The notes under the pieces: generated by a model
Database searches by the model: none
What the model saw: only the letters and a program-made list of their open reading frames with translations
Told to the model about the DNA's origin: nothing
Source of the DNA: Orbicella franksi
Taxonomy: Eukaryota
Length of the DNA stretch: 64,000 nucleotides
Reading direction: 5' to 3'
NCBI GenBank assembly: GCA_964199315.1
Contig: OZ116700.1
Location: 9,114,001 to 9,178,000 of the forward strand
Part shown: piece after piece, positions 42,644-62,559 of the stretch
Position numbering within the stretch: position 1 is the stretch's first letter
Layout of the letters: each line of letters begins with the position of its first letter
Translations under genes and position numbers: made by a program

Positions 42644-42789
42644 NNNNNNNNNNNNNNNNNNNNNNNNNNNNNNNNNNNNNNNNNNNNNNNNNNNNNNNNN
42701 NNNNNNNNNNNNNNNNNNNNNNNNNNNNNNNNNNNNNNNNNNNNNNNNNNNNNNNNNNNNNNNNNNNNNNNNNNNNNNNNNNNNNNNNN
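42644..42789. other. Assembly gap (146 N)
   Basis: Run of n characters. Confidence 1.
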
Positions 42790-43510: not shown

Positions 43511-45302
43511 CAGTAAAAACGAACCATTGTTTAGTAAAATATTGCGTGAGATATTAGTGTCACGCATTTCTTAACAGAGGCCATTTATGTCAGAATGTTT
43601 AGGGATTTCTTTTGAAATAATTGCAGATATGAATAGATCGTAAAATCTTTTTATTCTACTATATTGATGAAACACGTTGATGCCCTGGTCCCATACGTTT
43701 TCTTTTTTCTTTCCTCTAAACTGAAGTGAAATTGCGCCGTGAAAATTCTTTTACCTTATTTTTTTCACGAAAACGGGAAAATAATTTACCACAGGAACAT
43801 GCTGACTAAGATGCAATTTACAGACTTTGCTGTGGCGGACCAGACTGCAGAATATTGTAAAAGCTTTTCTTTTTATATTTTCAAGCGTATTATCATAACA
43901 TTACGTATTATTTAAATTCACTTTTTAAATGAAAAATTATAAAACCAGCTACGTTTCCACCTCGAAAGACGTTTAAACGAACAGTGCATATGATATAAAT
44001 TACAAAATGATCGACTTTAAATAAAAAAATTAACAGAGCTACGCACCTCTTCAGAACCTGTAATTTCGTTCGCTAAGGGCTAGATTCATTGTTGTTTGCG
44101 CTACTGTTTTCTCAGCCAATCCTGCAAAGCTTTCCGAGAGATGCGTGCCCCCTAAGAAAATAATTTCCTCGTATGTCTTACAGTAATTTCCTTTTTAAAG
44201 CTATGTCAAACATTTTTACCGAAGCCTAAAAATTGTAATACCTACGAAGCCTTTGGCCTTGGTTTACGTGATAAAATATAATTTCCTTCCGAGTCCTAGA
44301 TTGCGTTACATGTAGTTAAGAAATAAACAAGATAATGCATGCGCCGTGACTGATTAAAAGAGAATAACTACTTCATACAGAAACTACAATATTACTTTCC
44401 TTGCCTCAGAGAAATTATGGAAACTCTTGAAATTTTGGGAGATGTGGACTGATCAAGCTTTTATTGGTTATTAGTTATTTATTAGTTACTGTCTCCCAAA
44501 TATCCAGTTATCTTAGTAAGACCCAAGAGAGATTGTTTCCTCTTCTTAACGTTTAGATAATGTATGCGTGAATCCTAAACAGCAAGTAGCAAAAGTCAAA
44601 TTTTGCTTATCCTATATGGTACTTTTTACACCTGTCTTGTTGCATATGTTTTTTTTTTTTTTCATTCCTGGAAATAAATAAAATTGTCAGAACGAGATAT
44701 TCCTAACCCATTCTACCCCTCCCATAGCAATTCTAAATCACGATCTCAAAGTGAACGCGGGAACGCAGGTCGAATTCTGAAGGCTGACGACGACACGCGA
44801 ACTTGAGAACTGAGTTAGTGTCAATCAGTTTATAGGTGACAAATGCCACCACTAAGCGGAGCTAGAGAAGTAGGAAGCTAAAAAATAACAACACGCAAGG
44901 ATGCATGGGTAAATACACACAAGACTACATGATGCACATATGTATCGAATACGCTGAACAGTACGCAACTACTACTACTGTAGTACTTTTTTGGACATTG
45001 CGGTGGTAGTGAATCAAAAACGAACCAAGAAACGAAGGGAAACGCAGAACGGCCTTGTGTTAACCAAGAGACTTATGACTGTTATTTACTACCAACCTGT
45101 TGATAGTAACAGTTTTCTGTAATACCAAGACTTAACTCACGTGCGCTTAAAATATAGACAACCACTGTTAGTCATTGTGCTGATATTACAAACTCATACG
45201 AACTGAAACAACGTAAAAAGAATGATGACGTCATCAACTAATAAAAGTATTTTATACACTAAGCAAATAAAGACGAATTAAAACTACAGTAAAACTTCCC
45301 AA

Positions 45303-45605
45303 TACAGTTGAATACCGCTATTTCGAATTCTTAGGGAAAACGAAAAGCACAGTAGTTCGAAATAGCCGATAGTAAACTGACTGAATGGCGAATTTAAGGG
45401 AAATGAAATTGAGTTCGAAATAACAGAGAATTAAAAATAGCCAAGTTTGAATTTGCGGGGTCGAACTGTAGTCCGAAATAGCGAGAATTCGAAACAGCCG
45501 ATAGTTTACCGACTGAAGGGTACATCCAGGGGAAATGAAAAGTTGAGTTCGAAATAACGGGAAATTAAAGAATAACCGAGTTCGAATTAGCGGGGTCGGA
45601 CTGTA
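45303..45605. mobile_element. Tc1/mariner-type MITE with TA flanks
   Basis: TACAGTTGAATACCGCTATTTCGAA / TTCGAATTAGCGGGGTCGGACTGTA imperfect TIRs, with an internal duplicated GTTCGAAATA(A/G)C block. Confidence 0.7.
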
Positions 45606-45779
45606 TTTAACAATTGAGTAAAGCACAGGCTTTTGACTTCATGTTTAAACCTCACTGGCCAGATAAATTCATGGTCCAACCCAATCCTTTCCTCGATGCA
45701 AAACTTAAATTACTAAAAGGCTATGGGATACTCTATATAAAAATACTAGCTGCCAGTGATCATCATAATAATCGTAGGC

Positions 45780-48700
45780 TTAGTCAGGTCCAAATTCGTT
45801 GACGAGGAAATGATACATGAAACGTGCTTTCTTCTGGGTCAGCTGATTGACATTTCTCTTGCTAAGGCCTGCCTCCTTCTTTTTCGGTGCTCTCAAGAAC
45901 AGGGTACCAAATAAGGTGGCTGCAGTCAATAAAACAGCTTGTTAGAGATAAAACATGATTGACCATGGATACTTAATGGTCATACAATTCCTCTGTGGGT
46001 AACAATGGGAATAACGTCGATTTTCCAGTTAGGTTAATAAAGCACAGTCATTGAGGGCTCTGAGGAGAAGCAAGGTAATGAATAAGTGGGTTTATGCATG
46101 CGAGGGAGTATAGGTGCGCGCGAGAGCGCGTGCCTGCGAGCAAGTAGAACGATTTGTAAACTGATGAAAATGATTCGACTTACCCAGAGTTTTGGCGTCC
46201 AGTTTATTATCGTTAGAGTGCAGTAACAGCTCTCTCAGGAATGAACTAATATACGTAAACACATTCTGGTGGCTTTGAGGCATCTGGAATATCAACTGCA
46301 AGTGAAAAAACATACATGAGAAAATGACAGAAACTTGTCTGTACCAACTTTAAAGAAACTACCTGAACACCCACCAACAACATGCAATATCAGACAATGT
46401 TTTGACAACAAGAGAGGCCACACGGCCAAAAGCAGTACAGTCGAACCTGTTCACAACGGCCACCTTGGGGACGAAAAAGTGACCATTGATCAACTGGCCG
46501 CTGTCGAGGGGTTATTTTAGCAGTTGGGGCGCGCTTTAGTGGCCAATGCCGTTGTGGAGAGGTTAAAATAGAAGTGAGTGTATGGGCCTTCCGCCGGGAC
46601 AAAAAAGTGGCTGTTGTAGAGAGGTGGTCGCTAGTGCAGGTTTAACCCTAGTTACAATAAGTAGGAATTCTAAGTCAGTTTCATCTCCTTTGTCATTCAG
46701 GCCTTGAATCTTCTTTACACAAGCCATAATGCATGGCTCCCGCATATATACCTTTTTAAAGAACAAATTTCTTGTTCATACATTTGTTTCGAGAAGTAAT
46801 TTGTTTTGCTTTACTACGCTACACAATTGGCTTAAAAGACACGCTACTTTTTCATCCAATCAGAAGTAAAAACCAAAGCCCATCGCGACTCGCTCGCACA
46901 CGTTTTCCTGCGCTTCGCGTCAAGTACAAGCATTTAATTTACTTCTTATTTTGGTTTTGGTCTTACCACACGCAATTGGAAGCCGCTCTGAAGATTAAGT
47001 TGGTGAAATCACTTCGAGTGGGGTATGGGGCTGACAAAAAAAAAACAACAATAACAGCAACAACAACAAAATCGGTCAGCGATTAGCCAGTTGAGGGCAG
47101 TCTGGTAAGGAACATCTCGCAGGAGACGAAACTCGTCCTATAAAAAAACTAGGAACCCTAGTGAAATGCCGAGTCATGTCAAATCTTACCTGTTTGCAAA
47201 GCATGTAGTTATTGCAGCACTCAAGAGCTCTCTGGTAAAATGCATAAGGAATCACGGGTTCAGGTAAGGCTTCTAGAAAAATAAGTAAAGCTTCTGCTAC
47301 GGAGTAAATACTGCCAGCTTGGAACACGTCAAGGAACTATAACCACATCATGTTAGGTGCAATAAAACGCGGATGGCAAAATGGCTTTGTGGTTATATGA
47401 TCATTTTTGGGGATATTTAGAATTACCCTCAAATCAAAGGAAGCCACTAAATAATACCACAGAAGGGGCGTTAAGACTGGAACTTGCTACAGAAAAAAAA
47501 ATATGGGGAGGAGTACAAAACCCGGCAAAACAGACGGTAATACAAAATTTCGATTCTTTTAATAAGGCGACGTGAACAGCGAGGCCTAGTGGCTAAGGCG
47601 GTGCACTTGTAGCCCCCCCTCTGCCACTGGCCCGCCTACACTAGCACTAGCTATCCGCGGGCCAGTCTAATTTAAAAAAAATGTAAATTGAGGAACGAGA
47701 ATAAAGATTGCTTCCTTACATTAGCCTTCAAATGTTTGTAGTTAATTGTGTTTGGTAGAATCAAGACATACTAAATGTGACATTCCTGAAACAAGATAAA
47801 ACAATTGGAAAAAGTGGGCATGAAATTACAAGTAAAAACACCAGAAGGATACGCAGTTTACCACCACGGCAACAATCTAAATGTGTTCTGATCGCTTCCA
47901 AATCTCTCTCAAATCCAGACTGCCTGAGAATGTTCTCCTGAAGGGAAACCAAGAGTAGTATGTTAGCAAGATTGTCTTACGTGCTCCATCGTGTAGCACT
48001 CACGATTTGTCTCACCTGGCGCATGCCAAAGTTGAATAAGTGATCTGTTAGAAGCCACAGCTCTTTGGGAATTTCCAGTGGATGGGAATCTGATGAAGCT
48101 GAGGGATTTGATGAGTCGATATGCTCCTAATAGAAGGGAAAGAAGACAAATTAAGGTTTCTTTCTGAGAAATGCAACTATAGTAATATATATATTTTATT
48201 AGATGTTTTAGTGTGTAGTATCGCTGTATATTTTTACGAGTTGTGCCGTACTTTGACGAGCCCGTAGGGCGAGTCAAAATACAAACAACGAGTAAAAATA
48301 CACAGGGATGCTGCACACCAAAACATGCAATAAGAGATTTATTATCCAACTGCTGTATTCAATAAATTTATCAATGAAAGAGGGAGAGTGTGACAGTTTA
48401 GCGTGCGCGCGCCGACCTGTACGGCAAACAGGTTTTCTACTGGACAAATATGGCAAACAGGTTTTCTACTGTACAATATCGCTGTATATTTGTACTGTTA
48501 TTTGGACGGTATTCGGTGCAGTTGGATAATAAGGCAATTTACCGCACCCAAATTCGCAAGTAGTCAATCGGAAGCCGTCCTGATATCCTGCGATATCAAG
48601 TAATTGATCTGATATCGCTAGATATCATGCTCACTTGGTCCAATTTGGGTGCGGTAAATACCTTTTTTGGTACGCGTCGGAGCTGGCATATCAGGCGAGT

Positions 48701-51700
48701 TTGGTATCACCATGGGCATTTTGACTCGACTACGTCTCGCTAAAATACGAATCATGGCTCGATCAAATTCGCCTGATATGCCGCCGAAGCATACCAAAAA
48801 GGTACAATTAGGTAATAATAGTTAAATGGAAACTAAACTCACCAAGTTTACAAGAGTTGCAACAGGAACTTCTCTGATAGGTCCGTACATGCGTACCAAC
48901 GCTTCAATAGATGAACCGAAAACACTTGGGAGATAGTTACCGCTGACCGACACCTGTCTACCGTTAAGAAAATTACTGCAATATTGAAGGGAGCTATTTT
49001 CACTTAGCACAATATTACCACTGGAAGTAATATAATGTAAATACCTCTCAGGGGTTTCATTAAGGGCCGGGCACCGGGCAAACTGCCTGACCGTGAGGAT
49101 GATTTTCAGTGCCCCTCTGGTTTGACCATCTAGCGGAAGGTTTTTCTTATAAAGAAGTTCAGTTCTAATAGTTTTGCCTACGTGTGAAAACAAGTTGCCC
49201 TTCTGCTGAAAACGTTAATGAAACCCCTGATTATCACAGTAAGTAACTGTACCTGCAAAAAATTAACGTTTTTTGTCGCGCACCCAGCTCTTGGAAATTC
49301 GACAGTGATGATTCCATAGATAATTAGTCTGTGATCTTCCTTAGGGCTGCGTTTTCAGTATCGAAGTGCTCATCTTGAAGACAGCAGACTCGATATTCGT
49401 AATTTGTTGTAAGTTATAAGTATTGCAATGTTAGTAATGAACTATAGGTAATGCAAGACATGCAGTGAAAAAAAAAAACTAAATAAAATTAATAAGTAGA
49501 CTATGTAGCAACGTAGGAAGACACTTCTAGGTCTTTCCTAAAGAACATGTGACTACTCCAAAAAGGGTCAGCGAAGGAGGTTATAGATTTGTGAATTCCA
49601 AGGATATAAAAAAGTCTTTTCCACCCTCCAAGTGAAGAACGAGAATATCTTCAAGTTTCTCGTCTCCAGAATTCATGGTTCTTGACGATTCTTTATCAAC
49701 GTACACAGTCAGACGAACATGTTTGGTGCCTCCTGCCAGGACAAAGAACAAAGACTGTAAAACTACTCAAAAACAAGATCACGACACTTCTAATCTATTC
49801 CTTTTGAATCCAAGCTATAGACTACAGCTTTAACTTCAATCTCTTATTTCCATCGTTCATGAAAAGAGACGATAATTAAGTAAATTGACACAATCATGTG
49901 CGTCCAACTGCAATCTTTATCCCGGGTGGTAATCCTTACAATTACTCTCTGGATATGTTACCTGTTGTTATAATCCCCATACATGGTTTGACAGTCAACC
50001 AAGGCTTACAGTATTCAGTATCATCTAATTTAGCTATGAAAGCAAACCGAACTGGTACCTGTCAATCAATCAAACAGTCATCAATCACATAACCAAACCC
50101 AAGTTTCAAAATACACAGAAAATGGTAAAAAGACAAAAAATAACCCTTAGTAGAGTACCTATGACTATTTGCACAGTCATCCCATAATCGAGTATCAGGC
50201 AGGGGCGTAGCCAGAGGGGGGTGGTCCCTAAGGGTCCACCCCCCTCGCCCTTTTCTGGTGAAATGTTTGTTTTAGTAAAAAGCAGCCCTGAATAAGTTTG
50301 CTGAGTTTCGCAGTTAATGAAAGCATGATAATAGCCTTTACGAGATGTTGGGAAGAGAGAGAAAGAACGGATGGAGGGTAAGAGTGACGTACAGGTAAGA
50401 ACTGTATTTACAAATTAGAATTGGTCCAAACAAAGAGGTAAGTGCTGATATCCAGTTCAAACCAAAATACTCACCTGACCAGTGTTTACAATTTCCAAAG
50501 TGGCTGTCTGTTTTTCACGAAACTGGACATCTTTAAAAATAATCTACATAGAACAAGAAAAAAATAATCACAAACTTGGGGCTGGAGTTGTGATGTTCAA
50601 CCAAGCTCTCAGAGCTAAAATTCAAATAATTGTGTTGTAATGTGGAATGAGAATCAACATGTTGAGCTTGAAATAATAAAGGTTGACAAGTTTCCAATCC
50701 ACTATATGTGCAATACCTCTGTGGTACCCAGTTGGACTTGGGGCAGGTTTTCATTTTCTTTTCTGTCAAGTTTTCGTATGACATCTTCCATAACTTGTCT
50801 TTCTTGCTCCACATTTACAACTCTGACCTGTAAGTAGCAGTTGTTGGAGGTGAGCAGTAAAATCACATGCACGCAAAGACACTTCTAATATACATGTGGT
50901 GGTGGCTTATTCCTCAATGTACAGTAGTTGTAGACACTGTGACTTTTATTCTTATAGCCTATTCTGGGCTCCACTCTGTATCTGGTATAACCAACATTAT
51001 TATATGGATTGTGTTTGTAGTCGCTATAAATAAGGCACACTCTGATTGGCTAACTCTAGGGCATTATTATCTGTAATGCCCATCAGCCGATTGCGAGCCT
51101 GCAAAAACAAAGCAGAACGCCATATAATAAACTACTTCTTAACCTCGAACATTTGGTCTTTACAGGAAAATCTTAAACCTCAGTCTTGCTGTAAAATGGC
51201 AAGGTCTTGGTTTGAGATTTTCCCAGTCCTGACTCTTGCTTAATAAGTAGTTAAAACTGAATAAAAATGCCTTTGAATAGAAAACAAGGGAAAAAAGAAA
51301 GTAAGGTAACATATCTTGAGGTTCTAAATTATTATTATTTTATCCTGTCTAGGATTTTGAGGCCACACATTGAATCCATTTCTGACACTTAATGAGACAT
51401 AAAAGCATGAAATCGTAAAAATCTTATCTCACAATTCGTTTTTACTTGTTAAGAAAGCTTTTGGCAACCTTGTATGTAAAATATAAAATATCTTTAATGT
51501 AATTATCCCATGCCTATCATACATGGATCAAAACGCACTGTCTTGTTTTACAGACTTGAAAGCAAATAAAACATTATTTGTTGAGTTAAAGCATTATCAA
51601 TGCTTGTGACAGTAGAATAGAGCCTTGTGTATCACTTTTAGACTTTGAAAGGTCCCCACCCTCTCTATCCCACAAAATTGGGAATGCCTCTTTACAATGC

Positions 51701-54700
51701 ATCTAGAAGGGAGTGCATGAAGGGAGGCAGGTTTTAATACTGGTGCCTGGGTTACACTTACCCCAACTTCAAACAAGGCGCTGACAGGTTTATGGTCACT
51801 TATTTTTAGTTTATTATGGCTACGATATTCCAGCTGGTTGACTTGAGATCCTGTCCATAAAATACGATCACACCAGGCAGGGGCTCGACCTTTTTCGCTA
51901 AAAATAAAAAAATTCAAAAAAATCCAAAAATGTCTCAATATAGTACTCAGTGATCCAGACCTGCTTTCATTGTGACTGAAATGAAATCTACATTCATTAA
52001 ACCTTGCTGGCACATTTCTAGCAGTAATAAACAATCTCTCCCTTTGTGTACTAAGTCCTTCCTCAGCTAGAGGAACATCCAAGAATGATTCAATCTGAAA
52101 AATTCCACCTGATGATTAAGGACTATAGAGGTCCATGAAGAGTCAATGATTGCTTTTCACTTGCACTCACAAATTTAATACCACAAAAAAAAAAAGTCCT
52201 AAACACTGAACAGATGAAAACTTTCAGGCCTAGTTTGATCTGTATTAAACAAATTTTATACTGCTTCCATAAGAACTCTCTTGTCCATACAATCTTGTGC
52301 TTATATGGTTAAAACGTAAATGAGCAATATTCTGAGTGGCTCTTTTACACTTTGAAAGTGCATAAAGCAAAACCACATTGAGCTAATTTCCTCTACATGT
52401 GTGTTAGACAACCTTGTACTGATCAAATCCAATAGTAAAGTAATCACTGAGTTGACCCAACATTCTTAGGTTAAAGAAGTTCTATTTGAGCACTGCTTGT
52501 TATTAAAAAGCGACATCATCTATGCACAACCCTGTCATGTTAATAATAAAATCACCTTGTGTCCCAATTATCTGTTCCTGGATCGTATTTGTAAGTTGGT
52601 TTGAACTTGATGCTGCCTTCTTTAAAACCTTTAAAGCATTTCCTTTCTTTTTGTTGTTTGATGAGTTGATCATTGGCTAGGAGTTCTTCATACTGCCCTT
52701 TATCTGCCAATCTTCTCACGAGATCTGTATCCATGTCACTGATCCTGTAATTTAAGTCTCCTAACCAGAACACAGCCCTGACAGAGAGAGGATGTTTTGA
52801 TTATGTGAAACTCTGGAGACAAGCTATGTGTTTAACAAAATACATATATTCATGAAATGTGGCCAAATGTAATTTAGGCACAGTTTGAGTCGAGCCAATG
52901 CTGGCCAGCAGTCTCACAGGGTGACCATGCTCTGTGGGGTCTTATACGGAGTTTTGCAGGTATTATGTGTTTTTCTTGCCAGCTGTTTGTCTTGAGTGCC
53001 ATTTGTGCTTGTAGCCTGCTTTTGCTCCCTCCCCTCCCTCCCTTTCACTGGCGATGGTATGTATATGGGGTGGTAAGTATCTCCACTGAATCTATCAGTG
53101 TGACAGCGCCTGGTGGTTGCCACTCTCAGAGTTGCCATGGATACCTGCGTGCTCTACTTGAGGCTCATATCTCGGCTCCACCTTTCCCAAGCTCATCAAT
53201 TGGCGATTCATCAGTTTAATATTACATATAACTTACTCATGATCAGTGATTGAAAATGAACCATAGGACCCATTAAACTCCAGCTTGCTTAGAATATCTC
53301 TGTAGTCCTGTTGGTTGGAACAAATTATCGTCATTGATTTTTATTCAAGATAAAGATATACCCCTAATATCTTTCAGTTAAGAAATCCAAATCTAGTAAT
53401 ACCCAGTCATTATGATTGTCGAGCGACGGTAGACTCATAGGAAGGGCACTTACTTCCAGATTGAGCAGTCTGGATTTGAGGCCTGGCCAGAGAAACTGCA
53501 TTGTGTTCTTGGGCAAGACACTTAACTCTCACAGTGCCCCTCCCAACCCAAGTGTTTAAATGGGTAGTGGCGGATTTTAATTAATTCTGGGGAGTAGCCC
53601 TGTGATGGACTACCATTCCATCCAAGGAGGAGTAACACTCCTAGTACTTTATGCTATAGAAACCAGAGATAAGCACCAGCCTGATAGGCCAGTTGACGCA
53701 CATGCAGACTTTACTTTCACATGTGGTCTCATCTACAATCATGGACAAATTGTGTTGGAAAAGGCCAAAAACATGAAATCATAATCGTAATGCCTACAGA
53801 ATACGTGTTGACACCCCCATTCCCCCTTCCAATGTTGGAAAATGGTTAATTGCAAACTTGTGTCAGATGAAAGTGTTTTGTCAACATTGCACAGGGTTGG
53901 GAAGCGGCAAAATGTGTATAGATTGATTTTTTTCCAACCCTTGTGACCAAGTTTGTAGCTGCCAGTAATAATTATAATTAATACCGACAGTACTAGTCTC
54001 AGCTGGCAATCAATAACCAAATTTACCCACATCCTCCAAAATCATGTGGTTAGACAGTTGTGTGTAAGGAGATGAGATGTGTCTATGAAGCTTCAAGAGC
54101 AACCAGGTGTGTGGGAAATCTATTGACATCTAAGTGCAATAATTCTTTAGAAAATAGCCCAAAGAAAATACATGCACTGATGGGTTTAAAAATCATACAT
54201 CCTTAACTCGATAGAAACAGAACTAGCACAAGCTGTTGAGTTAAGATGGCCCTAGTAAGGAGAATTTACAGTTTGATGATCAAAGTAAACAAGCTGTTTT
54301 CTTTTTTTGTCACAGAATTTTCATAAAGAACTGGAAAACTTGTTTTCCGTGTTTCTAATATCGAGTTTTAGTATAAATCTACTAGCGTTCTATCACAACT
54401 GCCGTTCTCTGATTGGTTATGCTACTTGTTATCTATTCTTTGATAGATAGTGAGTAGTGTGGCAGTGTGCCCTTGTTAACAAAATGATGTCTGCTTCTTG
54501 ACATTTTCGAAGTGTCTGTGAAGAGGATTTAGATAAAGTTTTGAATGACTAGTAGATTTATACTAAAACAATTAAATTATTGCCTCTCGATTTCTATGTG
54601 TGATAGTTGACTCGAGCTGTACCCTCGTCAACTATCACATGATAGAAATCTTGTCTGAGCTCATAATCGAATTGTTTAATAGAAACACTTGTGGAAGTTT

Positions 54701-57700
54701 GAGAGAATTTGAAAACACTGTGGAAACACTTGCCTGTTTAATCACGTTCTCACAGCATTTCTCGTTCTCCCAATTAACTTCCACTTGTGTTTCTATAGCT
54801 CAATACTGAAACACGGCATACATTTTCAATTTCTTAAATATTATACTTAGCATCACTATACCTGGTTTCTCCTCTCAAACTCCTCTGTATGAGCTGCAAG
54901 ATGGGAGTTTACAAAACAAATACTTGTGTTGTGAATCTGCATTCTGATGGCCACACCTCCTTTGTTACCCTGTTTAGAACCAAAGTGTAGCTAATGAACA
55001 CAACAATTAAGGGCCTGTTTACAGGGAGGGTTACCCTAGCAAACGGGTTAACCCTAGCTGGAGGGCAAAAGATAGCCTGGGCTTACAAGCAAATTTTCAC
55101 AGGTTGGGTAACCCTACAACCCAGGACAACTTAATGTGCAGTTACACTCAAAGGGTCTGGAAATAAGTAGAAAGTAAACTGTTAACTCGGGTAAGCGGGT
55201 TAACCCTACCTGGACTGTTTACAAGAGAAAAAGTTAACCCGCCTGCCAGGGTAGCCCTGGCACACAGATAGGGTAACTTGCCTACCCAGGTAACCCTGGC
55301 CGCTTTGTAAACATGACGAAGAAAAATGAGGAAATGTGTGAGTGCTAGGGTAACCCGCTTGTGAGGGTAACCCTCTCTCCTTGTAAACAGGCCCTAAGAT
55401 CTAAATAATACATTACTATATAATCTTGCAAAGGTTTTCTGTACCCGACAATGCACTGTTCAGGCCTGGAACCAAGCAAAATCATTGGCTGTTTGCCATC
55501 ACCATAGAAACTCTGATGCAAAGTCCAATGATATATTAATTTTTAGTACTTAATAATGTGAAATCTGCTAATTTCTTTTCAATTTTTACATTGTATAATA
55601 ATTTAATTAACAAACTTGCAACTTTACTATTAATAGTAGAGACTGACCTGTCTGGTTTATGCACATATTTGTACAGCTGTACATTCCCACTCTTATTTTC
55701 TTTATTCATTTATAAAGATACTAATATTAAAAACTGGATCAATGCAGATAAATGAGGGAATTCAATGGTTTTCATTGGCTTAGCCTTCATGGTATATGAG
55801 CCATTATACCATGCTTTGCAAATATGGGAAGTGTAATTGTAACTCTTTTAGGTGTTTTAACTTTAATTTATTTTACTTCTATTCAGTTTTCTATATTTGG
55901 GGGCACTTTTAATAAAACAGTTATGGTATCATAATTCTTATTCCACATGTGCTTGTTGAATATGAGATGGTTAATAGTTAACTCGTGTCCAATGCATGCT
56001 TGTGTAATAATTGTTAAATAATTTATCAAGTGTTACAATATGTCATCAGGATAAATAAAATGCAAGACTTGCAAGTAAAAACTCCTCAGATCCTTACCAT
56101 AAGACCCATGATGCCAGTAGCTACAGTTTCAGCATCAACTTCAGTGACATAATGCTGATACTGGCTCTTGACAAAAACCATCAATAAGATGCCCACCAGA
56201 CGAATGGTCTTCACCTGGAGAAGTGCAAACAAATGACAAATTTTCAACACATGAAAGCCAAAGGGGTGGAGGGGGGGGGGGGGAATACAAACTTTAATTT
56301 AGAGAATCTGATGTGAACAGTCATTAAACATTGTCGTTGGGTTTCTCTATGTTGTCTACATTACTTTGTAGCTTCTTAACCTCAAAACAAAATAGACAAC
56401 GCAATGCCCCTTAAAAAAGTACTTTTGCCATAACCTTAGTGTACTGGGCTTTAGGGTGGAGTCCTCGCTCAGCAATCTTTAGCCACTCATCTTCTTTTGG
56501 AGTAACATTTTTCAGCAATGTCTCAGCACTGAGGTCAAGCTCCTGAAAACTAAATAAACAAAACCAGTATTGGAAATTAGCGCTTGCCCGCTCACCAATG
56601 TGAGTGCGAAGAGTGTCGGGTGAGTACAAATTATTGACCACTCGCCCGTTTGGCGAGTACATAATACTGATAACACTCCTTTTTATTTTCCATTTTATCT
56701 CTAAACCAAAACTTCCAGGTGCTTTTTTCACCTTTTTTATCTTTTTAGCTGCTCAACTAATTTGCCAATAATAAAACACAACTTAGTGTTTCATAAAATA
56801 ATAGACAAAATGAAATATGGCTTCCTTGTAGTGACGCATCTTTCTGGGCGAGTGAAAGTAACACTGGGTGAGTGCAGTTTCAGAGTCACTCACCCGAATG
56901 GCGAGTGCTGTGAAAATTTAGTTTCCAGCTCTGCAAAACACCCTTCTGTAAGTTGTCTTGTAAAGTGGAACCCCACCTTATGGTAGGTCACCTTTTTATT
57001 ATGGTCACTTCTTTCTTCTGGCAAAACACCCAAAATTTTCTTGTAAGAAAATCCTGTTAATGCAGCCACCTCCTTAACACTCCAATGGCCACATTCTGAA
57101 ATCCCAACCTGTATATTATTATTTTACCCTGTTTACATATATGGCACTCTAACCAGTCATGTTACTCTTTCCATAGATCCTTTGCCTAAATGGCGTCTAA
57201 ATTTGAATAACAATAATTTATACATCCTTAGCCTCATACTCATGTTTCAAGACAAAGGATTTTTTCACATGAATGTGAGGCTAAGGGTATATACGTATTG
57301 TTATTCAAATATAGGCACCATTTATGCAAAGGGTCTACTGTTAATAATATATTGTAAGTATGTATTAATTGAAGTTGATGGTTCAATTTTTCTTTAAATT
57401 ATTTCCACATTCCCGATGCTTATTAAAGAACAGTTGCATAGAAGTACAATTGTGATAATATTTACTCAATTTAGACCAGTCATGAAATTTGACCCTAGGT
57501 CCTTAATAGGACCACCCCATTAATATGGCATGAATGTGGCATTAATATGGCATTAATATGGCCAAATTTTCATGGCCCTTTGGCTCCAAGTGGCTTATGA
57601 AAAGAAAATGTCTCACCCCAGACTGAACACATCAGGTGGATCTTGATCAACAGCAAGCCAAGGTGCCACATTCTCTGCAGGAGTCTGGCCATTGACATTC

Positions 57701-60700
57701 CATGTTCCAACAAAGATTCTACATTAATACACACATTTAATTATAACATGAGGCAAGTTGTCAATAGCCATATATGGTTGACTGTGGAATAATTTATAAC
57801 CTAGAGTCACACTAAGCTCTCAATGTGTACTTGTAAAGGTCTACAGCTAAACAGCCCTCTCTGTGAACATAACTCTTGTACATTGAACACATATTGAATA
57901 CTTATGCCTTCCTTGTTTTTGCTGTTTGTTAGTTGGTAGTTTTCTGAGAAACGATATATCTAGCCACAAGATATGAAGTTGTGTCTGTATAAATAGTCTG
58001 GCTTATTCTTTTTCTTTCATCTACACTGTAGTATGTTTTGCTTGCACAAGTGTTACTAACCACTTTTTGCACAGTGCCAACAAGGCAAGAATGTCATTTA
58101 TCAGGAAAAATTCATTTTGGATGAAAGAATTTCTCTCCACATGTTTTACAACTCAACACTTTAGCTCCTGCATTGCCAAATGTGCTCATTCTGACATGAC
58201 TTGTCTGTTACTGTGTACATGTAGGTATACCTTACAGTTACTTTGCCTTCAAGATATTTGTTACTTTAGTTTGTGTTTAGAAACTTGTTACACTGGACAG
58301 ATGACCCCTGGGGGAACCCCCATATAAAATGGGCAGTGTGCTCGTTGGAAATTTTGAAAAGAACCCCTAAGCGGTACCAAGATCCAGTTTTGTGGGCATG
58401 GCTTGCACTTTTTTTAAACCCTCAGGGTACCAATTCTAAAGCAACACATAACCTCCTGTTGAGCTTTTTCTTTTGGCTCAATACCCAAAAGGCACCACAA
58501 ACACTCCCACTGTCAACCTTTTGAGGCTGAATATGTACCCTTAAAAGGTATTACAAGCACCCCTATCCTTTTCATATGGGTGTCACCACCCCCCCTCCCC
58601 CACTCCCCCCCCCCCGGATGTAACTCACTTCAGCTTTTTGATATGAGTGTATTCCGATTCTCTTGTAGCCATGTGCAGTTTAATAAATCCATCCCTGGCA
58701 CTAACGCTTGTTGGCAGGATAGACCTCCTGGGTAGTGCAGGTGAGTCAGTACTGCACTTCTCTACTTCATCAGAGGCAGTTAGACTCGCTGACGACAGTG
58801 ATGGGTGTATGGTGGGTGAAGGAGAAAAACCTGGCATTCCAAAGACATCTAATGATGCATCGTCTGGTTTGGATTCTGAGGCTAGTAAAACAATAATTCA
58901 AATAACAAGATGTTGATGCTACCACACACAGACATTCCCAAAAGACATCAAATTTCTTAAATTTCTTAAACAAGGAAATCATAACCACCACCATCATCAT
59001 CATCAGATGGAGATTTCCTCAACTGATATATTCTGGTAGTTTCAAATTGTTATGTGGCAGAGATTTTGATTTCATCCCTCAAATTTAAACGCTTTGCTGG
59101 ACATTGCATTTTCAACTCTCACGGCCCTTCATGCTTTTTATGTACTACATGAAACAAGCTCAATTTGTTGGACTTTCTTAGAGATAATAATTATTATAAT
59201 TGCTAGCATTGCAAATAATCCAACTCCAAATTTTATGCAGTAAAGGGCAGAGGAAGAGGTGTTCCACTAAGTTTGCTATTTCTAACTTTTTGTTTACTAA
59301 GTTCAAAATTCCTCTTTGTATATTTTACCTGTTACAACTTCTGATCCACTTGAGCTTGCTACTTCTAGGTGATCCCAAGGCCAGCCATCTGTTTGAATCA
59401 GTGACTGAGTAATTAGTTAGTTATATGGGTTATTGACCAAGCGTGAGGTCAAGATGGTTGGATATGGTGTGTTTATGGACCGAGATGGAGTCAAGGTCTG
59501 TAAATCCATATCCAGCTGAACAAGTTCAGTCAACACTGTTTTCTTGTGGGACACAGTGGGTAATCCAAAGCTGGCAAGATAGCGCAATTTTGCTCGCTTG
59601 GGTAGCCAATCGAAGCACCGGATTCAGTTCACCTTGCCTGCTCACTGAGCTAGACATTTTAGTGATAAAAAAACTTATTGACTTCAGATGTTGTGGGACT
59701 GCAACACTCATTAGCCCTAGTGAACATTTTTCCAGGATCTTCAAACTTTAAAGGACATTTGAGCACCATCTTGAGGATATGGAGAATCTTGGTAAGATCC
59801 ATGCAGAAATCTCAATCTTTCAGAAATTGTTACTTGAGTCTTCAAAATTTTCTGGACCAAAGTACTCAAGGACATTGGTTGACGTCTTTGTAGTAAGATC
59901 CTTGTCTTGGCTAGGGAGGACCTTTTAAGACTCAGAGTACACCTTACAGTGATACTTACCTATGCTTATGAAACTTTTTCTTCCAATCAACTGCTGATAT
60001 TTTTCTAGCCACTTGAATTCAGGCACACCAACCATGTGAGCCCTTTGTCGATAAGCTTTACAGGTAAACAAACAAAAACTTTTATCAGTAATAACCTATT
60101 AAAACAGACAGGGTTACAAAAGGGATGTGGTGAGAAAGAAAAGGCAAGGAACCAATTGAGACTCAGATTTTAAGGAGAAAGTGGAGGTGGTAAGGTCACA
60201 TCTTAAGGAAACAGGCTAACAACATCACCCAACAGGCACTAAAATGGAACCCTCTGGGTAAGAGGAAGAAGGATCACCCAAGGAACTCCTGGAGAAGGGG
60301 TGTGGAGTCTGAAATGAGGAAGTGGGGCCACACCTGGAACATACTAGGAAGGCTTGCCCAGGACAGAAGCTGATGGAGAACGGATGTGGTCAATGGTCTT
60401 AAGTATGCTCCAGCTGAAGCTGAGGGACAAATCAATCACCTTATTGAAACCACAACCAGAGTATTGAAACCCCTTACTCTGGAATTGTTGTAGCTAAATA
60501 TCTGTCACTATTAATAAGAAATTCAAACCAGTTCAAATGCTACTAATAATACTGAAAGAAGTGGCATCACCTCCAATGGCTTTATTCAATTCAACCAAGA
60601 AATTATTTCCTTGAGTATCCTTCTTCAACTCAAAGACAAGCTTTGTCTGGTCGTCAGTCAGGATTTGAAACCGTACTACACCTATAATAGAAATGCATAT

Positions 60701-62559
60701 TATACAGTCACTTTATTTTAAAAGCAAATTTTTATTGTGCATGATATCTGACTCAATTTGCATAACTGCTGATTTTGCATTCCAATATTGCTGCAATTAT
60801 CGGTGTATCTTTCTAATTAAGATTTTTGTATTGCAGCTAATAAAAATTATACATATCTTGGGTGAGTTTATGGACAATGCTATGATGATATTTAATTTAA
60901 TAAAATTAATTAATAAGTTTCTTTAAAAAATTTACATGAACAGCATATTAATTGATATAGGATGTTGCAACATGCCAAGTATTACTAGTTAACAAGAAAA
61001 AAAATGATAATTGTAATGATAATTTTTTTTAAACTATTGACTGTCAATTCATTGTTTACCCTCTTTGTCGTTACTTTCATCAGCTGGTTGATCTTTACAT
61101 ACAAAAAATATAAAAAAAACCAAAACATTTGAATATTAGTAAGATAGACTACAACCTATTATTTTAATGTTACTTTCTGGCTGGGAAGCCCATATAGTGA
61201 GAAACCATGACCTTGGAAGGTCTTGGAAATGCTGCCCAAGGCTGCAAGCCAAGGACAGCATTTTCAAGTCCAAGGTTGCAGTTTTTCACTTTACAGACTG
61301 ACCCTACGCTGGTAAATAACTTATTTATTTTTTCCTCTCTCTCAAATCTTTTCTAATTGTTGACCTTTTCCACAACACAATGTGCCTATGTGTTACCGTT
61401 AAACCATGGTCAGAGATAGGAAAATCTGAACTGCCCTAAGAAACAATCAGATTGGAGGATTTGTTACTGAAATGAGTGACAACATGAGAGTAAACATGTG
61501 TGTGTTACCTAGCAACACAACAAACTGTCACACTGTCACACTTTGACCTCAGCCAGGGATCAAACAAGGATGACTTGACCTGGAAGAGGTGCACTGAGAG
61601 CCAGCCGATCACCTTCCCTCTTACATTACATTGTACATTATTATATTATACTTTTTTATACACAAACAAATATCTCAAACACATGACTTGTATATGATTG
61701 TCAAAATATGTTGTTACTAACATTTCTCTGCCAAGTGTACAAAATTGAAGTTAAGTACCAACTAACTCGAAAGATTTTAAAAGAAATGTGGACACTACAT
61801 GACCTCAAGATAAAATAAGCGTGAACACATACCAGCCACAGTTGCGTACGAAAAAGGTCCACGGATGGCCAAAACATACAGGACCTCTAAATACTTTTCT
61901 TGAAAAGATGATTCACCCATCCACTGAAAGATGATCAACCTGTTAAAATAAGTGGTGAGTGTGTGAATTTTATTAAATGCAGATCAGAATTTACATGTGG
62001 TAACTGATGAATGGATGGGGAAATATATACATTGCATTGGATACAAAAGGTAATTAAGTCAATTTTTAATTAATTAATATGTATTTTATAACAATGATTT
62101 TCTCAGAATTAAATTGAAAATGTTTTTTCCAGGGAATATTTTTACACACCATACACTAAGTTCTTGAATTATTTACAAACAAGCAATCTGAAAGATACTT
62201 TAGTCTTAAAATTAATCAACGTTGTCAGGGTTTGAAAAGAACTTGAATTCCAGCTTGCCCTTGGGACAAGCAGCTCTCAAATTTTGCTTGTCCTTAGCAA
62301 GTCTTAGTTTGCTCTTCTAGTAGTTTAGTTGACACAAGATTTGCCTGATCCCTGGGAATGAAATGTTACATGTACTTGCCAAGAAGGAAAATCTACTTGT
62401 CCCAAATGTCCAGATGGCACTGTGCCCTGCTGTTGTATTGTTCACTTAAACATAAGCTTAAAGTCTTGTATACACCAAAAATTAAGTACCCAGTATCCAG
62501 AGTTCTTGTTATGAGAGAAATGAGGCAGCCAACTTTGTTGTGATCCTTTAACAGAACTC
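45780..62559 (-). CDS. OCRL: OCRL/INPP5B-family inositol polyphosphate 5-phosphatase (PH, 5-phosphatase, ASH, RhoGAP); 23 coding exons recovered, 5' exon(s) not located
   Basis: Exons in transcript order: 62490-62559, 61833-61939, 60571-60681, 59960-60055, 59329-59388, 58629-58881, 57617-57718, 56435-56549, 56098-56214, 54862-54969, 53237-53307, 52556-52777, 51762-51897, 50717-50827, 50475-50543, 49962-50058, 49608-49732, 48843-48953, 48016-48126, 47853-47937, 47190-47317, 46184-46295, 45780-45919. All phases are compatible and the frame is open (2657 nt, about 884 aa plus the missing N-terminus). Motifs: [110 protein letters not shown]. Confidence 0.96.
46436..46650. mobile_element. Tc1/mariner-type MITE remnant in an OCRL intron
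   Basis: TACAGTCGAACCTGTTCACAACGGCCACCT ... AGAGGTGGTCGCTAGTGCAGGTTTAAC. Confidence 0.55.
47318..47852 (-). other. U12-type intron with GT-AG termini in the OCRL-like gene
   Basis: 5' splice site |GTATCCTTC, branch site TTCCTTGAC (47328-47336) 11 nt from the AG, and no polypyrimidine tract. The splice gives GKL|[11 protein letters not shown]. Confidence 0.88.
48537..48804. mobile_element. Two abutting small MITEs in an OCRL intron
   Basis: A perfect 18-bp TIR pair ATTTACCGCACCCAAATT (48537-48554 / 48642-48659), immediately followed by a second element TACCTTTTTTGGTA..CATATCAGGCGAGTTTG / CAAATTCGCCTGATATG..TACCAAAAAGGTA (48659-48804). Confidence 0.7.
48954..49607 (-). other. U12-type (minor spliceosome) intron with AT-AG termini in the OCRL-like gene
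   Basis: 5' splice site |ATATCCTTG (minus strand from 49607), branch site TTCTTAAC (48963-48970), 3' end ..GGTAGACAG|. This splice gives KDFF|VSVSGNYLP, colinear with human OCRL KDYFLTISGNYLP. No GT donor is present at this junction. Confidence 0.85.
53418..53715 (+). mobile_element. tRNA-derived SINE, older copy of the 32639-32935 family, in an OCRL intron
   Basis: CTTGGGCAAGACACTTAACTCTCACAGTGCC..CCCTGTGATGGACTA..CATCCAAGG..AGAAACCAGAGATAAG body. Confidence 0.75.
55011..55394. mobile_element. PIF/Harbinger-type MITE in an OCRL intron
   Basis: TIRs GGGCCTGTTTACA / TGTAAACAGGCCC, TAA target-site duplication on both sides, and internal GGGTAACCCT repeats. Confidence 0.85.
60128..60425 (+). 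mobile_element. 5'-truncated RTE-clade LINE remnant, antisense to OCRL
   Basis: Translation [61 protein letters not shown] matches the RTE ORF C-terminus; it contains in-frame stops. Confidence 0.85.

What the first reader, a model, noticed from the sequence alone, without database searches (positions are those of the whole stretch)
47853..47937. OCRL-like RhoGAP domain has Arg at the arginine-finger position
Seen in sequence: this exon encodes ENILRQSG, with the Arg codon AGG at 47923-47925 on the minus strand. Established: human OCRL has EDLFQTPG at this position, and the Gln replacing the catalytic Arg makes the vertebrate OCRL/INPP5B RhoGAP-like domain inactive; active RhoGAPs read EGIFRxS(G/A). 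Inference: this protein may retain or have regained Rho/Rac/Cdc42 GAP activity, coupling PI(4,5)P2 hydrolysis directly to GTPase inactivation. Caveat: other GAP-supporting residues look degenerate (LLIFLEALP lacks the LKxFLRELP Lys/Arg; KTLA stands in for NLA), so activity is not guaranteed.
Basis: partly seen in the sequence, partly recalled or inferred. Interest (0 to 1): 0.75.

Follow-up and report, generated by a model that had tools for sequence, protein, structure and literature searches.

The report
Coral OCRL pseudo-GAP with finger-position arginine
A stony-coral version of the Lowe-syndrome lipid phosphatase OCRL really does carry an arginine where true RhoGAPs keep their catalytic "finger", but every other catalytic or binding residue is still missing and close relatives swap the arginine for lysine, so the domain is most likely still an inactive binding module.

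Summary
It reads ENILRQSG, with Arg = AGG at 47925-47923. DNA contigs and RNA reads show no variant there, and RNA reads confirm all seven splice junctions of the C-terminal gene model.

HMMER alignments place this Arg on the catalytic Arg of N-chimaerin, and on Gln of human OCRL. The family profile puts the same column on the catalytic Arg of ARHGAP5. An AlphaFold model (pLDDT 92.7) puts it in the loop between helices A and A1.

The functional inference is weak.
- **Finger column:** across 349 family members it reads Q, E, R, K, I, L, T and others, and it changes at the median rate for the domain.
- **Distribution in Anthozoa:** Arg is found in most stony corals and one octocoral. Pocilloporid corals and sea anemones have Lys.
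- **Outgroups:** medusozoans, a sponge and a choanoflagellate have hydrophobic residues; bilaterians have mostly Q or E.
- **Other determinants:** the equivalents of Lys319, Arg323, Asn391, Val394 and Pro398 are L, E, T, T, T, as in human OCRL.

The Arg is most likely a derived anthozoan substitution on an old pseudo-GAP scaffold. I put real GAP activity at about 10%. I found no earlier report of this pattern.

The parts
47923..47925 (-). AGG codon for the Arg at the arginine-finger-equivalent position (residue 183 of the ASH-RhoGAP model; aligns with Gln of human OCRL and with the catalytic Arg of chimaerin)
   Evidence: no variant in DNA or RNA
47853..47937 (-). Finger-loop exon (85 nt, starts in phase 0, ends in phase 1): [28 protein letters not shown]; end of the A-A1 loop plus helix A1 of the RhoGAP-like domain
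   Evidence: both junctions seen in RNA
48016..48126 (-). Exon encoding the linker and helix A (…[22 protein letters not shown])
   Evidence: junctions 48126|48843 and 47937|48016 in RNA
47190..47317 (-). Exon with [25 protein letters not shown]…: the Lys319 and Arg323 equivalents are Leu and Glu
   Evidence: junctions in RNA
46184..46295 (-). Exon with …[19 protein letters not shown]: start of the degenerate 'NLA' motif (KTLA; Asn391 equivalent = Thr)
   Evidence: junctions in RNA
45783..45919 (-). Last coding exon ([12 protein letters not shown]…NEFGPD, then stop TAA at 45782-45780); Val394 and Pro398 equivalents = Thr, Thr
48843..48953 (-). Exon spanning the end of the ASH domain and the start of the RhoGAP-like domain ([37 protein letters not shown])
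49608..50058 (-). Two ASH-domain exons (50058-49962 and 49732-49608) with the intron between them
47318..47852 (-). U12-type GT-AG intron directly downstream of the finger exon (donor GTATCCTT; branch-site-like TTCCTTGAC ending 10 nt before the AG)
   Evidence: junction 47317|47853 in RNA
48954..49607 (-). U12-type AT-AG intron (donor ATATCCTT)
   Evidence: junction 48953|49608 with ends AT..AG in 4 RNA reads and 1 RNA contig
45780..61920 (-). Whole OCRL/INPP5B-like gene: about 21 coding exons; PH-like region, 5-phosphatase, ASH and RhoGAP-like domains
   Evidence: exon-by-exon matches to P0300 residues 1-866, all on G000:C3 inside the window; Pfam domains of P0300

Best explanation
The exon encodes the loop between helices A and A1, and helix A1, of the RhoGAP-like domain of the single coral orthologue of OCRL/INPP5B. 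That protein is a PI(4,5)P2 5-phosphatase with PH, 5-phosphatase, ASH and RhoGAP-like domains. The Arg is real and lies exactly where active RhoGAPs carry their catalytic arginine. However, it sits on a scaffold that had already lost the rest of the GAP machinery in the common ancestor of all sampled OCRL proteins. Most likely the domain works as in human OCRL: it is a catalytically dead module that binds Rho-family GTPases and endocytic adaptors and helps place the phosphatase on membranes. On this reading the basic residue (Arg or Lys in Anthozoa) is a lineage-specific surface substitution. At most it adds an electrostatic contact, and it is not a working arginine finger. Shown here: the position, expression, phylogenetic distribution and the missing partner residues. 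Inferred: the lack of catalysis and the binding-module role, by homology with human OCRL.
For: (1) Family membership. The window's C-terminal 302 residues are 99% identical to Orbicella faveolata OCRL-1-like P0300. P0300 carries 5-phosphatase, OCRL-type ASH and RhoGAP Pfam domains. The AlphaFold model (pLDDT 92.7) superposes on human OCRL ASH-RhoGAP 3QIS with TM 0.96 and rmsd 1.2 A. (2) The other GAP determinants are absent. Aligned to N-chimaerin and ARHGAP5, ALKLYFRDLP / ALKAFFADLP corresponds to [10 protein letters not shown], so Lys becomes Leu and Arg becomes Glu. ENLGIVFGP / DNLSICFWP corresponds to KTLATLFGT, so Asn, Val (Ile or Ser in the two printed templates) and Pro all become Thr. 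Family-wide, the Lys319 equivalent is Leu in 343 of 350 rows and the Arg323 equivalent is Glu or Asp in 344 of 350. Arg282 and Lys319 are described as the defining basic pair of RhoGAPs, and Arg323, Asn391, Val394 and Pro398 as binding determinants whose loss accompanies undetectable activity in p85 (PMC8305018). (3) The finger column is not constrained like a catalytic residue. It reads Q119, E91, R45, K29, I20, L16, T12, V8 and others. It shows 13 parsimony changes on a 49-tip tree against a domain median of 14, while its neighbours Leu(-1) and Gly(+3) show 2 each. (4) Arg and Lys interchange inside Hexacorallia. The residue is Lys in every sequence of the Pocillopora cluster (15 of 15) and the Stylophora cluster (12 of 12), and in Nematostella and Actinia. 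It is Arg in every sequence of the Porites, Acropora and Montipora clusters and in Orbicella, Oculina and Desmophyllum. From my own knowledge, Lys is a very poor substitute for a GAP arginine finger. (5) Human OCRL and INPP5B are regarded as inactive GAPs that still bind Rac1 and Cdc42 (PMC8305018; PMC4278560).
Against: The residue is basic in all 12 anthozoan lineages sampled, including an octocoral whose motif EQGIFRQSA is close to the canonical EGIFRxS(G/A). Both changes seen inside Anthozoa are conservative R/K swaps. This hints at selection for positive charge. ARHGAP5 (p190B) also lacks the Arg323 equivalent (its motif reads FFADLP), so not every determinant need be essential; that p190B is an active GAP is from my own knowledge. 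One early paper (Faucherre 2003) is cited by a review as treating OCRL1 as a RhoGAP for Rac1 and Cdc42. No biochemical data exist for any cnidarian OCRL.
Confidence: 0.75

Rival explanations
1. The Arg is a working arginine finger. On this view anthozoan OCRL is bifunctional, removing PI(4,5)P2 and switching off a Rho-family GTPase on the same membrane.
For: The Arg aligns with the catalytic Arg of N-chimaerin; the family profile puts the same column on ARHGAP5's catalytic Arg; and the octocoral Arg aligns with those of beta2-chimaerin, ARHGAP12 and Myo9b. It lies in the A-A1 loop of a confident RhoGAP-fold model, whose RhoGAP part superposes on p50RhoGAP from the RhoA.GDP.AlF4 complex 1TX4 (TM 0.73 by target). 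The flanking Leu and Gly that shape the loop are conserved. A basic residue is kept throughout the sampled Anthozoa.
Against: The partner Lys319 equivalent is Leu, and the Arg323, Asn391, Val394 and Pro398 equivalents are Glu, Thr, Thr, Thr, as in inactive human OCRL. Lys replaces Arg in pocilloporid corals and sea anemones. The column varies at the median rate. p85 BH domains that lack the same binding determinants show no detectable RhoGAP activity (PMC8305018).
Confidence: 0.1
2. The Arg is ancestral: the first OCRL had an active RhoGAP domain, anthozoans alone kept the finger, and all other lineages lost it independently.
For: Arg occurs in both anthozoan subclasses (Octocorallia and Hexacorallia). 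It also occurs sporadically in a hydrozoan-like cluster (P0289, 5 of 5 sequences) and in a chiton, Liolophura.
Against: The choanoflagellate has M, the sponge L, scyphozoans I, most hydrozoans L, V or M, hemichordates S, other bilaterians Q or E, and several deeply divergent, unnamed representatives in the sample have Q. TbOCRL of Trypanosoma is reported to carry Gln (PMC3214021). This scenario needs at least five independent losses, against one to three gains. The Lys319 and Arg323 equivalents are already Leu and Glu/Asp in nearly all family members.
Confidence: 0.08
3. The codon is an assembly or sequencing error, or the gene is a pseudogene, so the residue means nothing.
For: None found.
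Against: The same letters appear in independent DNA contigs and RNA reads. Seven introns are spliced exactly as modelled. The reading frame is open to a TAA stop. The same ENILRQSG motif appears in Orbicella faveolata, Oculina and an unnamed scleractinian, P0299. The genome has a single locus.
Confidence: 0.01

Closest known systems
Human OCRL (and INPP5B) ASH-RhoGAP-like module (PDB 2QV2, 3QIS)
   Same: Same domain order (PH-like, 5-phosphatase, ASH, RhoGAP-like). The RhoGAP-like part is about 44% identical. The model superposes at TM 0.96 and 1.2 A. The degenerate motifs are identical or near-identical ([16 protein letters not shown]; LATLF..LLLR), and the Lys319, Arg323 and Asn391 equivalents are missing in both.
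   Different: The finger position is Arg in the coral and Gln in human OCRL and INPP5B. The coral protein has a shorter linker before helix A. P0300 shows no OCRL clathrin-box domain (PF16726) hit.
Active RhoGAP domains (N-/beta2-chimaerin, ARHGAP5/p190B, p50RhoGAP)
   Same: Same fold (Foldseek probability 1.0, TM by target 0.73-0.78). An Arg sits in the equivalent ...L/F-R-x-S-G loop after helix A.
   Different: The coral lacks the conserved Lys (ALK.. becomes ALL..), the Arg of FLRELP (becomes Glu), the Asn of NLA (becomes Thr) and the Pro of VFGP (becomes Thr). Its Arg is not invariant among orthologues.
Other RhoGAP-like pseudo-GAPs (p85 BH domain, ARHGAP36, DEPDC1, TbOCRL)
   Same: These are RhoGAP folds kept for binding rather than catalysis. 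The review states that the p85 isoforms lack Arg323, Asn391, Val394 and Pro398 and show no detectable RhoGAP activity (PMC8305018). TbOCRL is described as an R-to-Q pseudo-GAP that still binds its Rho-like GTPase (PMC3214021).
   Different: The listed pseudo-GAPs (ARHGAP36, DEP1/2, OCRL1, INPP5B) lack the finger residue. The coral protein has it but lacks the surrounding machinery.

Membership tests
OCRL/INPP5B (type II inositol polyphosphate 5-phosphatases with ASH-RhoGAP-like tail) | Central inositol 5-phosphatase (EEP) domain | tested here: met
   PF22669 scores E 2.3e-88 on P0300, which is 99% identical to the window model over its C-terminal 302 residues. The phosphatase exons match P0300 at about 77-95% over the matched six-frame stretches, which include flanking intron.
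OCRL/INPP5B | OCRL-type ASH domain directly followed by a C-terminal RhoGAP-like domain | tested here: met
   PF21310 E 6.3e-40 and PF00620 E 6.6e-23 (81.7 bits, cut-off 24.5). Profile hit to 2QV2/3QIS at E about 1e-142. Foldseek TM 0.96.
OCRL/INPP5B | N-terminal INPP5B-type PH domain | tested here: inconclusive
   PF16776 scores 20.9 bits, below the curated cut-off of 29.2. Many orthologues carry the precomputed domain.
OCRL/INPP5B | Family-typical pseudo-GAP substitutions (Leu and Glu/Asp in place of the RhoGAP Lys319 and Arg323) | tested here: met
   The window reads [10 protein letters not shown]. Leu in 343 of 350 and Glu/Asp in 344 of 350 family members.
Catalytically active RhoGAP | RhoGAP fold | tested here: met
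Catalytically active RhoGAP | Arginine finger in the loop after helix A | tested here: met
   Arg aligns with the Arg of EGLYRVSG in N-chimaerin, and the family column aligns with that of ARHGAP5. It lies in loop 175-187 between helices 162-174 and 188-200 of the model. This is sequence- and topology-level evidence only.
Catalytically active RhoGAP | Conserved partner lysine (Lys319 in p50RhoGAP numbering) | tested here: not met
   Leu in the window and in 343 of 350 relatives. Its importance is stated in PMC8305018.
Catalytically active RhoGAP | Binding determinants Arg323, Asn391, Val394, Pro398 | tested here: not met
   Glu, Thr, Thr, Thr. The p50RhoGAP numbering is taken and mapped through the chimaerin and ARHGAP5 alignments. 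The p50RhoGAP alignment itself was not printed.
Catalytically active RhoGAP | Invariance of the finger Arg among orthologues | tested here: not met
   Lys in Pocillopora, Stylophora, Nematostella and Actinia; non-basic residues outside Anthozoa.
Catalytically active RhoGAP | Stimulation of GTP hydrolysis on a Rho-family GTPase | not testable with these tools
   Needs a biochemical assay.

The most novel reading that the evidence does not exclude
Anthozoan OCRL could be a natural case of a pseudo-enzyme domain that has partly come back to life. A re-acquired arginine finger would give the RhoGAP-like domain weak but real GAP activity toward a cnidarian Rho-family GTPase. PI(4,5)P2 removal and GTPase inactivation would then be carried out by one polypeptide, with pocilloporid corals and sea anemones (Lys) as natural low-activity variants.
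Probability: 0.1. Interest if true: 0.75.

Novelty: new variant of a known kind. Interest (0 to 1): 0.3.

Why it matters
OCRL is the Lowe syndrome / Dent-2 gene. Its RhoGAP-like domain is a textbook pseudo-GAP whose inactivity is usually put down to the missing arginine. A natural lineage that has the arginine but none of the other determinants is a ready-made test of whether the finger alone is enough. The Arg (most corals) versus Lys (Pocilloporidae, anemones) versus Gln (vertebrates) series could be compared directly in a GAP assay. If the domain is inactive, as expected, it shows that the domain's deadness is over-determined and that the finger position drifts freely. If it is active, it would be a rare case of reactivation in a pseudo-enzyme domain. 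For genome annotation the gene is an ordinary, already predicted OCRL orthologue.

Tried and rejected
- **Junction finder:** my first automatic splice-junction finder picked several wrong junctions where exons were missed or donors were weak. I replaced them by manual curation and then verified them with RNA.
- **First homologue search:** the search with the arthropod-like representative P0020 returned mostly arthropods and no close relatives. Searches with P0035 and P0300 gave the cnidarian set.
- **Ancestral reconstruction:** I did not try it any other way, and used only treekit's parsimony change counts. The polarity argument (gain rather than retention) therefore rests on outgroup comparison.
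- **Complex prediction:** Complex prediction was not run. A binding result would also not settle catalysis, since human OCRL already binds Rac and Cdc42.
- **p50RhoGAP alignment:** a residue-by-residue alignment was not obtained because p50RhoGAP ranked below the five printed alignments. The mapping to p50 numbering goes through chimaerin and ARHGAP5.
- **Literature:** searches found no statement about the finger residue in cnidarian OCRL. The Amin et al. 2016 RhoGAP survey is not in the searchable library and is cited only through the review PMC8305018.
- **Rfam:** a scan of 44000-62500 found nothing.
- **Paralogue idea:** I rejected the idea that a second OCRL paralogue carries the Gln. Only this locus matches the ASH-RhoGAP part of the query.
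Full report
**The observation**

The minus strand of 47853-47937 translates to [28 protein letters not shown], with AGG (Arg) at 47925-47923. The stretch is a bona fide exon. It begins after a CAG acceptor and ends before a GTATCCTT donor. The upstream exon ends …[19 protein letters not shown].

I curated the C-terminal gene model by hand against the best full-length homologue. The exons are:
- 50058-49962
- 49732-49608
- 48953-48843
- 48126-48016
- 47937-47853
- 47317-47190
- 46295-46184
- 45919-45783, followed by a TAA stop

Public poly-A RNA reads (X23) and RNA contigs (X15) show every one of the seven junctions exactly as modelled. No run shows another letter anywhere in the finger exon. 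One DNA contig covers 46892-48225 with zero differences. The codon is therefore not an assembly slip, and the gene is transcribed and correctly spliced.

**What the gene is**

An 82-residue phosphatase exon found OCRL/INPP5B-type proteins across eukaryotes. The modelled 302-residue C-terminus is 99% identical to [quoted passage not shown] (P0300). It is 82-92% identical to other stony corals and 67% identical to sea anemones. The window therefore comes from Orbicella or a very close relative.

P0300 carries 5-phosphatase (E 2.3e-88), OCRL-type ASH (6.3e-40) and RhoGAP (6.6e-23) Pfam domains, plus a sub-threshold INPP5B-PH match. The 497-Mb genome has one such locus. All matches to the ASH-RhoGAP part lie in this window, and the few other hits cover only the phosphatase domain. 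There is no second paralogue that could hold a "normal" Gln copy.

**Is the Arg at the finger position?**

Yes, on three lines of evidence.
- **Alignment to human OCRL.** HMMER aligns [13 protein letters not shown] without gaps to hqEDLFQTPGmq of human OCRL (2QV2), so Arg falls on Gln.
- **Alignment to active RhoGAPs.** The same search aligns the motif to lnsEGLYRVSGfs of N-chimaerin, Arg on the catalytic Arg. A profile of 49 family members aligns the same column to EGLYRVSG of ARHGAP5. The octocoral orthologue aligns Arg on Arg with beta2-chimaerin, ARHGAP12 and Myo9b.
- **Structure.** An AlphaFold2 model of the ASH-RhoGAP module (pLDDT 92.7, pTM 0.89) puts residue 183 in the loop 175-187 between helices 162-174 and 188-200. 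From my own knowledge, that is where RhoGAP fingers sit. The model matches human OCRL 3QIS (TM 0.96, rmsd 1.2 A). It also matches RhoGAP domains, including p50RhoGAP from the RhoA.GDP.AlF4 complex 1TX4.

**The rest of the GAP machinery**

The same printed alignments map the other determinants.
- Chimaerin ALKLYFRDLP and ARHGAP5 ALKAFFADLP correspond to coral [10 protein letters not shown]. The Lys319 equivalent becomes Leu and the Arg323 equivalent becomes Glu.
- Chimaerin ENLGIVFGP and ARHGAP5 DNLSICFWP correspond to KTLATLFGT. The Asn391, Val394 and Pro398 equivalents all become Thr.

Across 350 aligned rows (349 relatives plus the window's own model) the Lys319 equivalent is Leu in 343, and the Arg323 equivalent is Glu or Asp in 344. 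All anthozoans share these substitutions with human OCRL.

The review PMC8305018 calls Arg282 and Lys319 the defining basic pair of RhoGAPs. It says OCRL1 and INPP5B are inactive, and it says p85, which lacks Arg323, Asn391, Val394 and Pro398, shows no detectable RhoGAP activity.

**Distribution of the residue**

| Lineage | Residue at the finger column |
|---|---|
| Scleractinia: Orbicella, Oculina, Desmophyllum, cluster P0299 | Arg |
| Scleractinia: Porites (11/11), Acropora (15/15), Montipora (6/6) | Arg |
| Scleractinia, Pocilloporidae: Pocillopora (15/15), Stylophora (12/12) | Lys |
| Sea anemones: Nematostella, Actinia | Lys |
| Octocoral: Dendronephthya (motif EQGIFRQSA) | Arg |
| Hydrozoans | L, V or M; one unnamed hydrozoan-like cluster has Arg |
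| Scyphozoans | I |
| Sponge: Sycon | L |
| Choanoflagellate | M |
| Hemichordates | S |
| Other bilaterians | Q or E; one chiton (Liolophura) has Arg |

Over all 349 relatives the column reads Q119, E91, R45, K29, I20, L16, T12, V8, S4, M3, with single N, C and W. These counts include redundant cluster members.

A maximum-likelihood tree of 49 representatives shows well-supported Cnidaria, Medusozoa, Hexacorallia, Scleractinia and Pocilloporidae clades. On it the column needs 13 changes overall, 4 for basic versus non-basic, and 5 for Arg versus other. Thirteen changes is the median for the domain (median 14). The flanking Leu(-1) and Gly(+3) change only twice each. So the loop's structural frame is conserved while the finger position itself is free to vary.

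Trypanosome OCRL is also reported to have Gln (PMC3214021). Outgroup comparison therefore favours a gain of a basic residue in the anthozoan stem over retention of an ancestral finger. At least two R/K swaps followed inside Hexacorallia. Model-based ancestral reconstruction was not available here.

**Interpretation**

A catalytic finger should be invariant. It is also poorly replaced by Lys, which I state from my own knowledge of RasGAP and RhoGAP mutagenesis. Here Arg and Lys alternate between closely related coral families, and the residue appeared on a scaffold whose partner residues had long been replaced.

The most likely reading (about 75%) is that the domain remains a pseudo-GAP. It would act like human OCRL's, binding Rac/Cdc42-type GTPases and F&H-motif adaptors to place the 5-phosphatase on membranes (PMC4278560).

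The consistent positive charge across Anthozoa, and the fact that both internal changes are conservative, leave room for a non-catalytic electrostatic role. I include that possibility within the main explanation. Real GAP activity is not excluded. ARHGAP5, for example, also lacks the Arg323 equivalent. I put it at about 10%.

**Known or new**

The gene itself is already predicted in Orbicella faveolata. I found no paper that mentions the finger residue of cnidarian OCRL. One survey of cnidarian phosphoinositide genes only lists OCRL's Pfam domains (PMC9909359). The feature is a new variant within a well-known pseudo-GAP family. It is useful as a natural test series (Arg, Lys, Gln) but is not strong evidence of a new activity.

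**Side observations**

The finger exon is followed by a U12-type GT-AG intron: donor GTATCCTT, with a TTCCTTGAC branch site ending 10 nt before the AG. Two exons upstream lies a U12-type AT-AG intron with donor ATATCCTT, which another first-stage note had flagged. Both splices are confirmed by RNA.

Noticed in passing
window 47318-47852 (minus strand): The intron directly after the finger exon looks U12-type of the GT-AG subclass: donor GTATCCTT, branch-site-like TTCCTTGAC ending 10 nt before the 3' AG, and no polypyrimidine tract. The splice 47317|47853 is seen in RNA reads and in one RNA contig.
   Followed up: partly
window 48954-49607 (minus strand): The AT-AG intron with an ATATCCTT donor, flagged by another first-stage note (s1-210832), is confirmed at RNA level. 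The junction 48953|49608 with ends AT..AG appears in 4 raw RNA reads and one RNA contig. The gene therefore has two U12-type introns within about 2 kb.
   Followed up: partly
window 48093 (and 47214, 50037, 50056): Exonic variants appear in RNA reads of 'organism C'. 48093 A>G (7 of 10 reads) turns Ser into Pro in the linker before helix A, which matches the O. faveolata protein P0300. 47214 G>A (7 of 12 reads) is at a third codon position. The window may come from a sister species or another haplotype.
   Followed up: partly
window 48199-48639 and 46729-47022: These intronic stretches have very high summed contig depth in a DNA run (up to about 1.7e5 against about 90-120 for flanking sequence). 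They are probably high-copy repeats or transposon fragments inside OCRL introns.
   Followed up: no
P0491 (Dendronephthya gigantea OCRL-1-like), residues about 740-750: The octocoral orthologue reads EQGIFRQSA, which is closer to the canonical RhoGAP EGIFRxS(G/A) than the stony-coral ENILRQSG. It still has the Leu, Glu and Ile replacements at the Lys319, Arg323 and Asn391 equivalents.
   Followed up: partly
P0307 (Liolophura sinensis) and cluster P0289/P0468-P0471 (unnamed, hydrozoan-like): Arg occurs independently at the finger column in a chiton (NDLFRLPG) and in one hydrozoan-like lineage (QNILRQEG), among relatives that have Gln or Leu.
   Followed up: no
window 42644-42789: A run of 146 N, the only gap in the window, lies about 3 kb downstream of the OCRL stop codon. 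I left it untouched.
   Followed up: no
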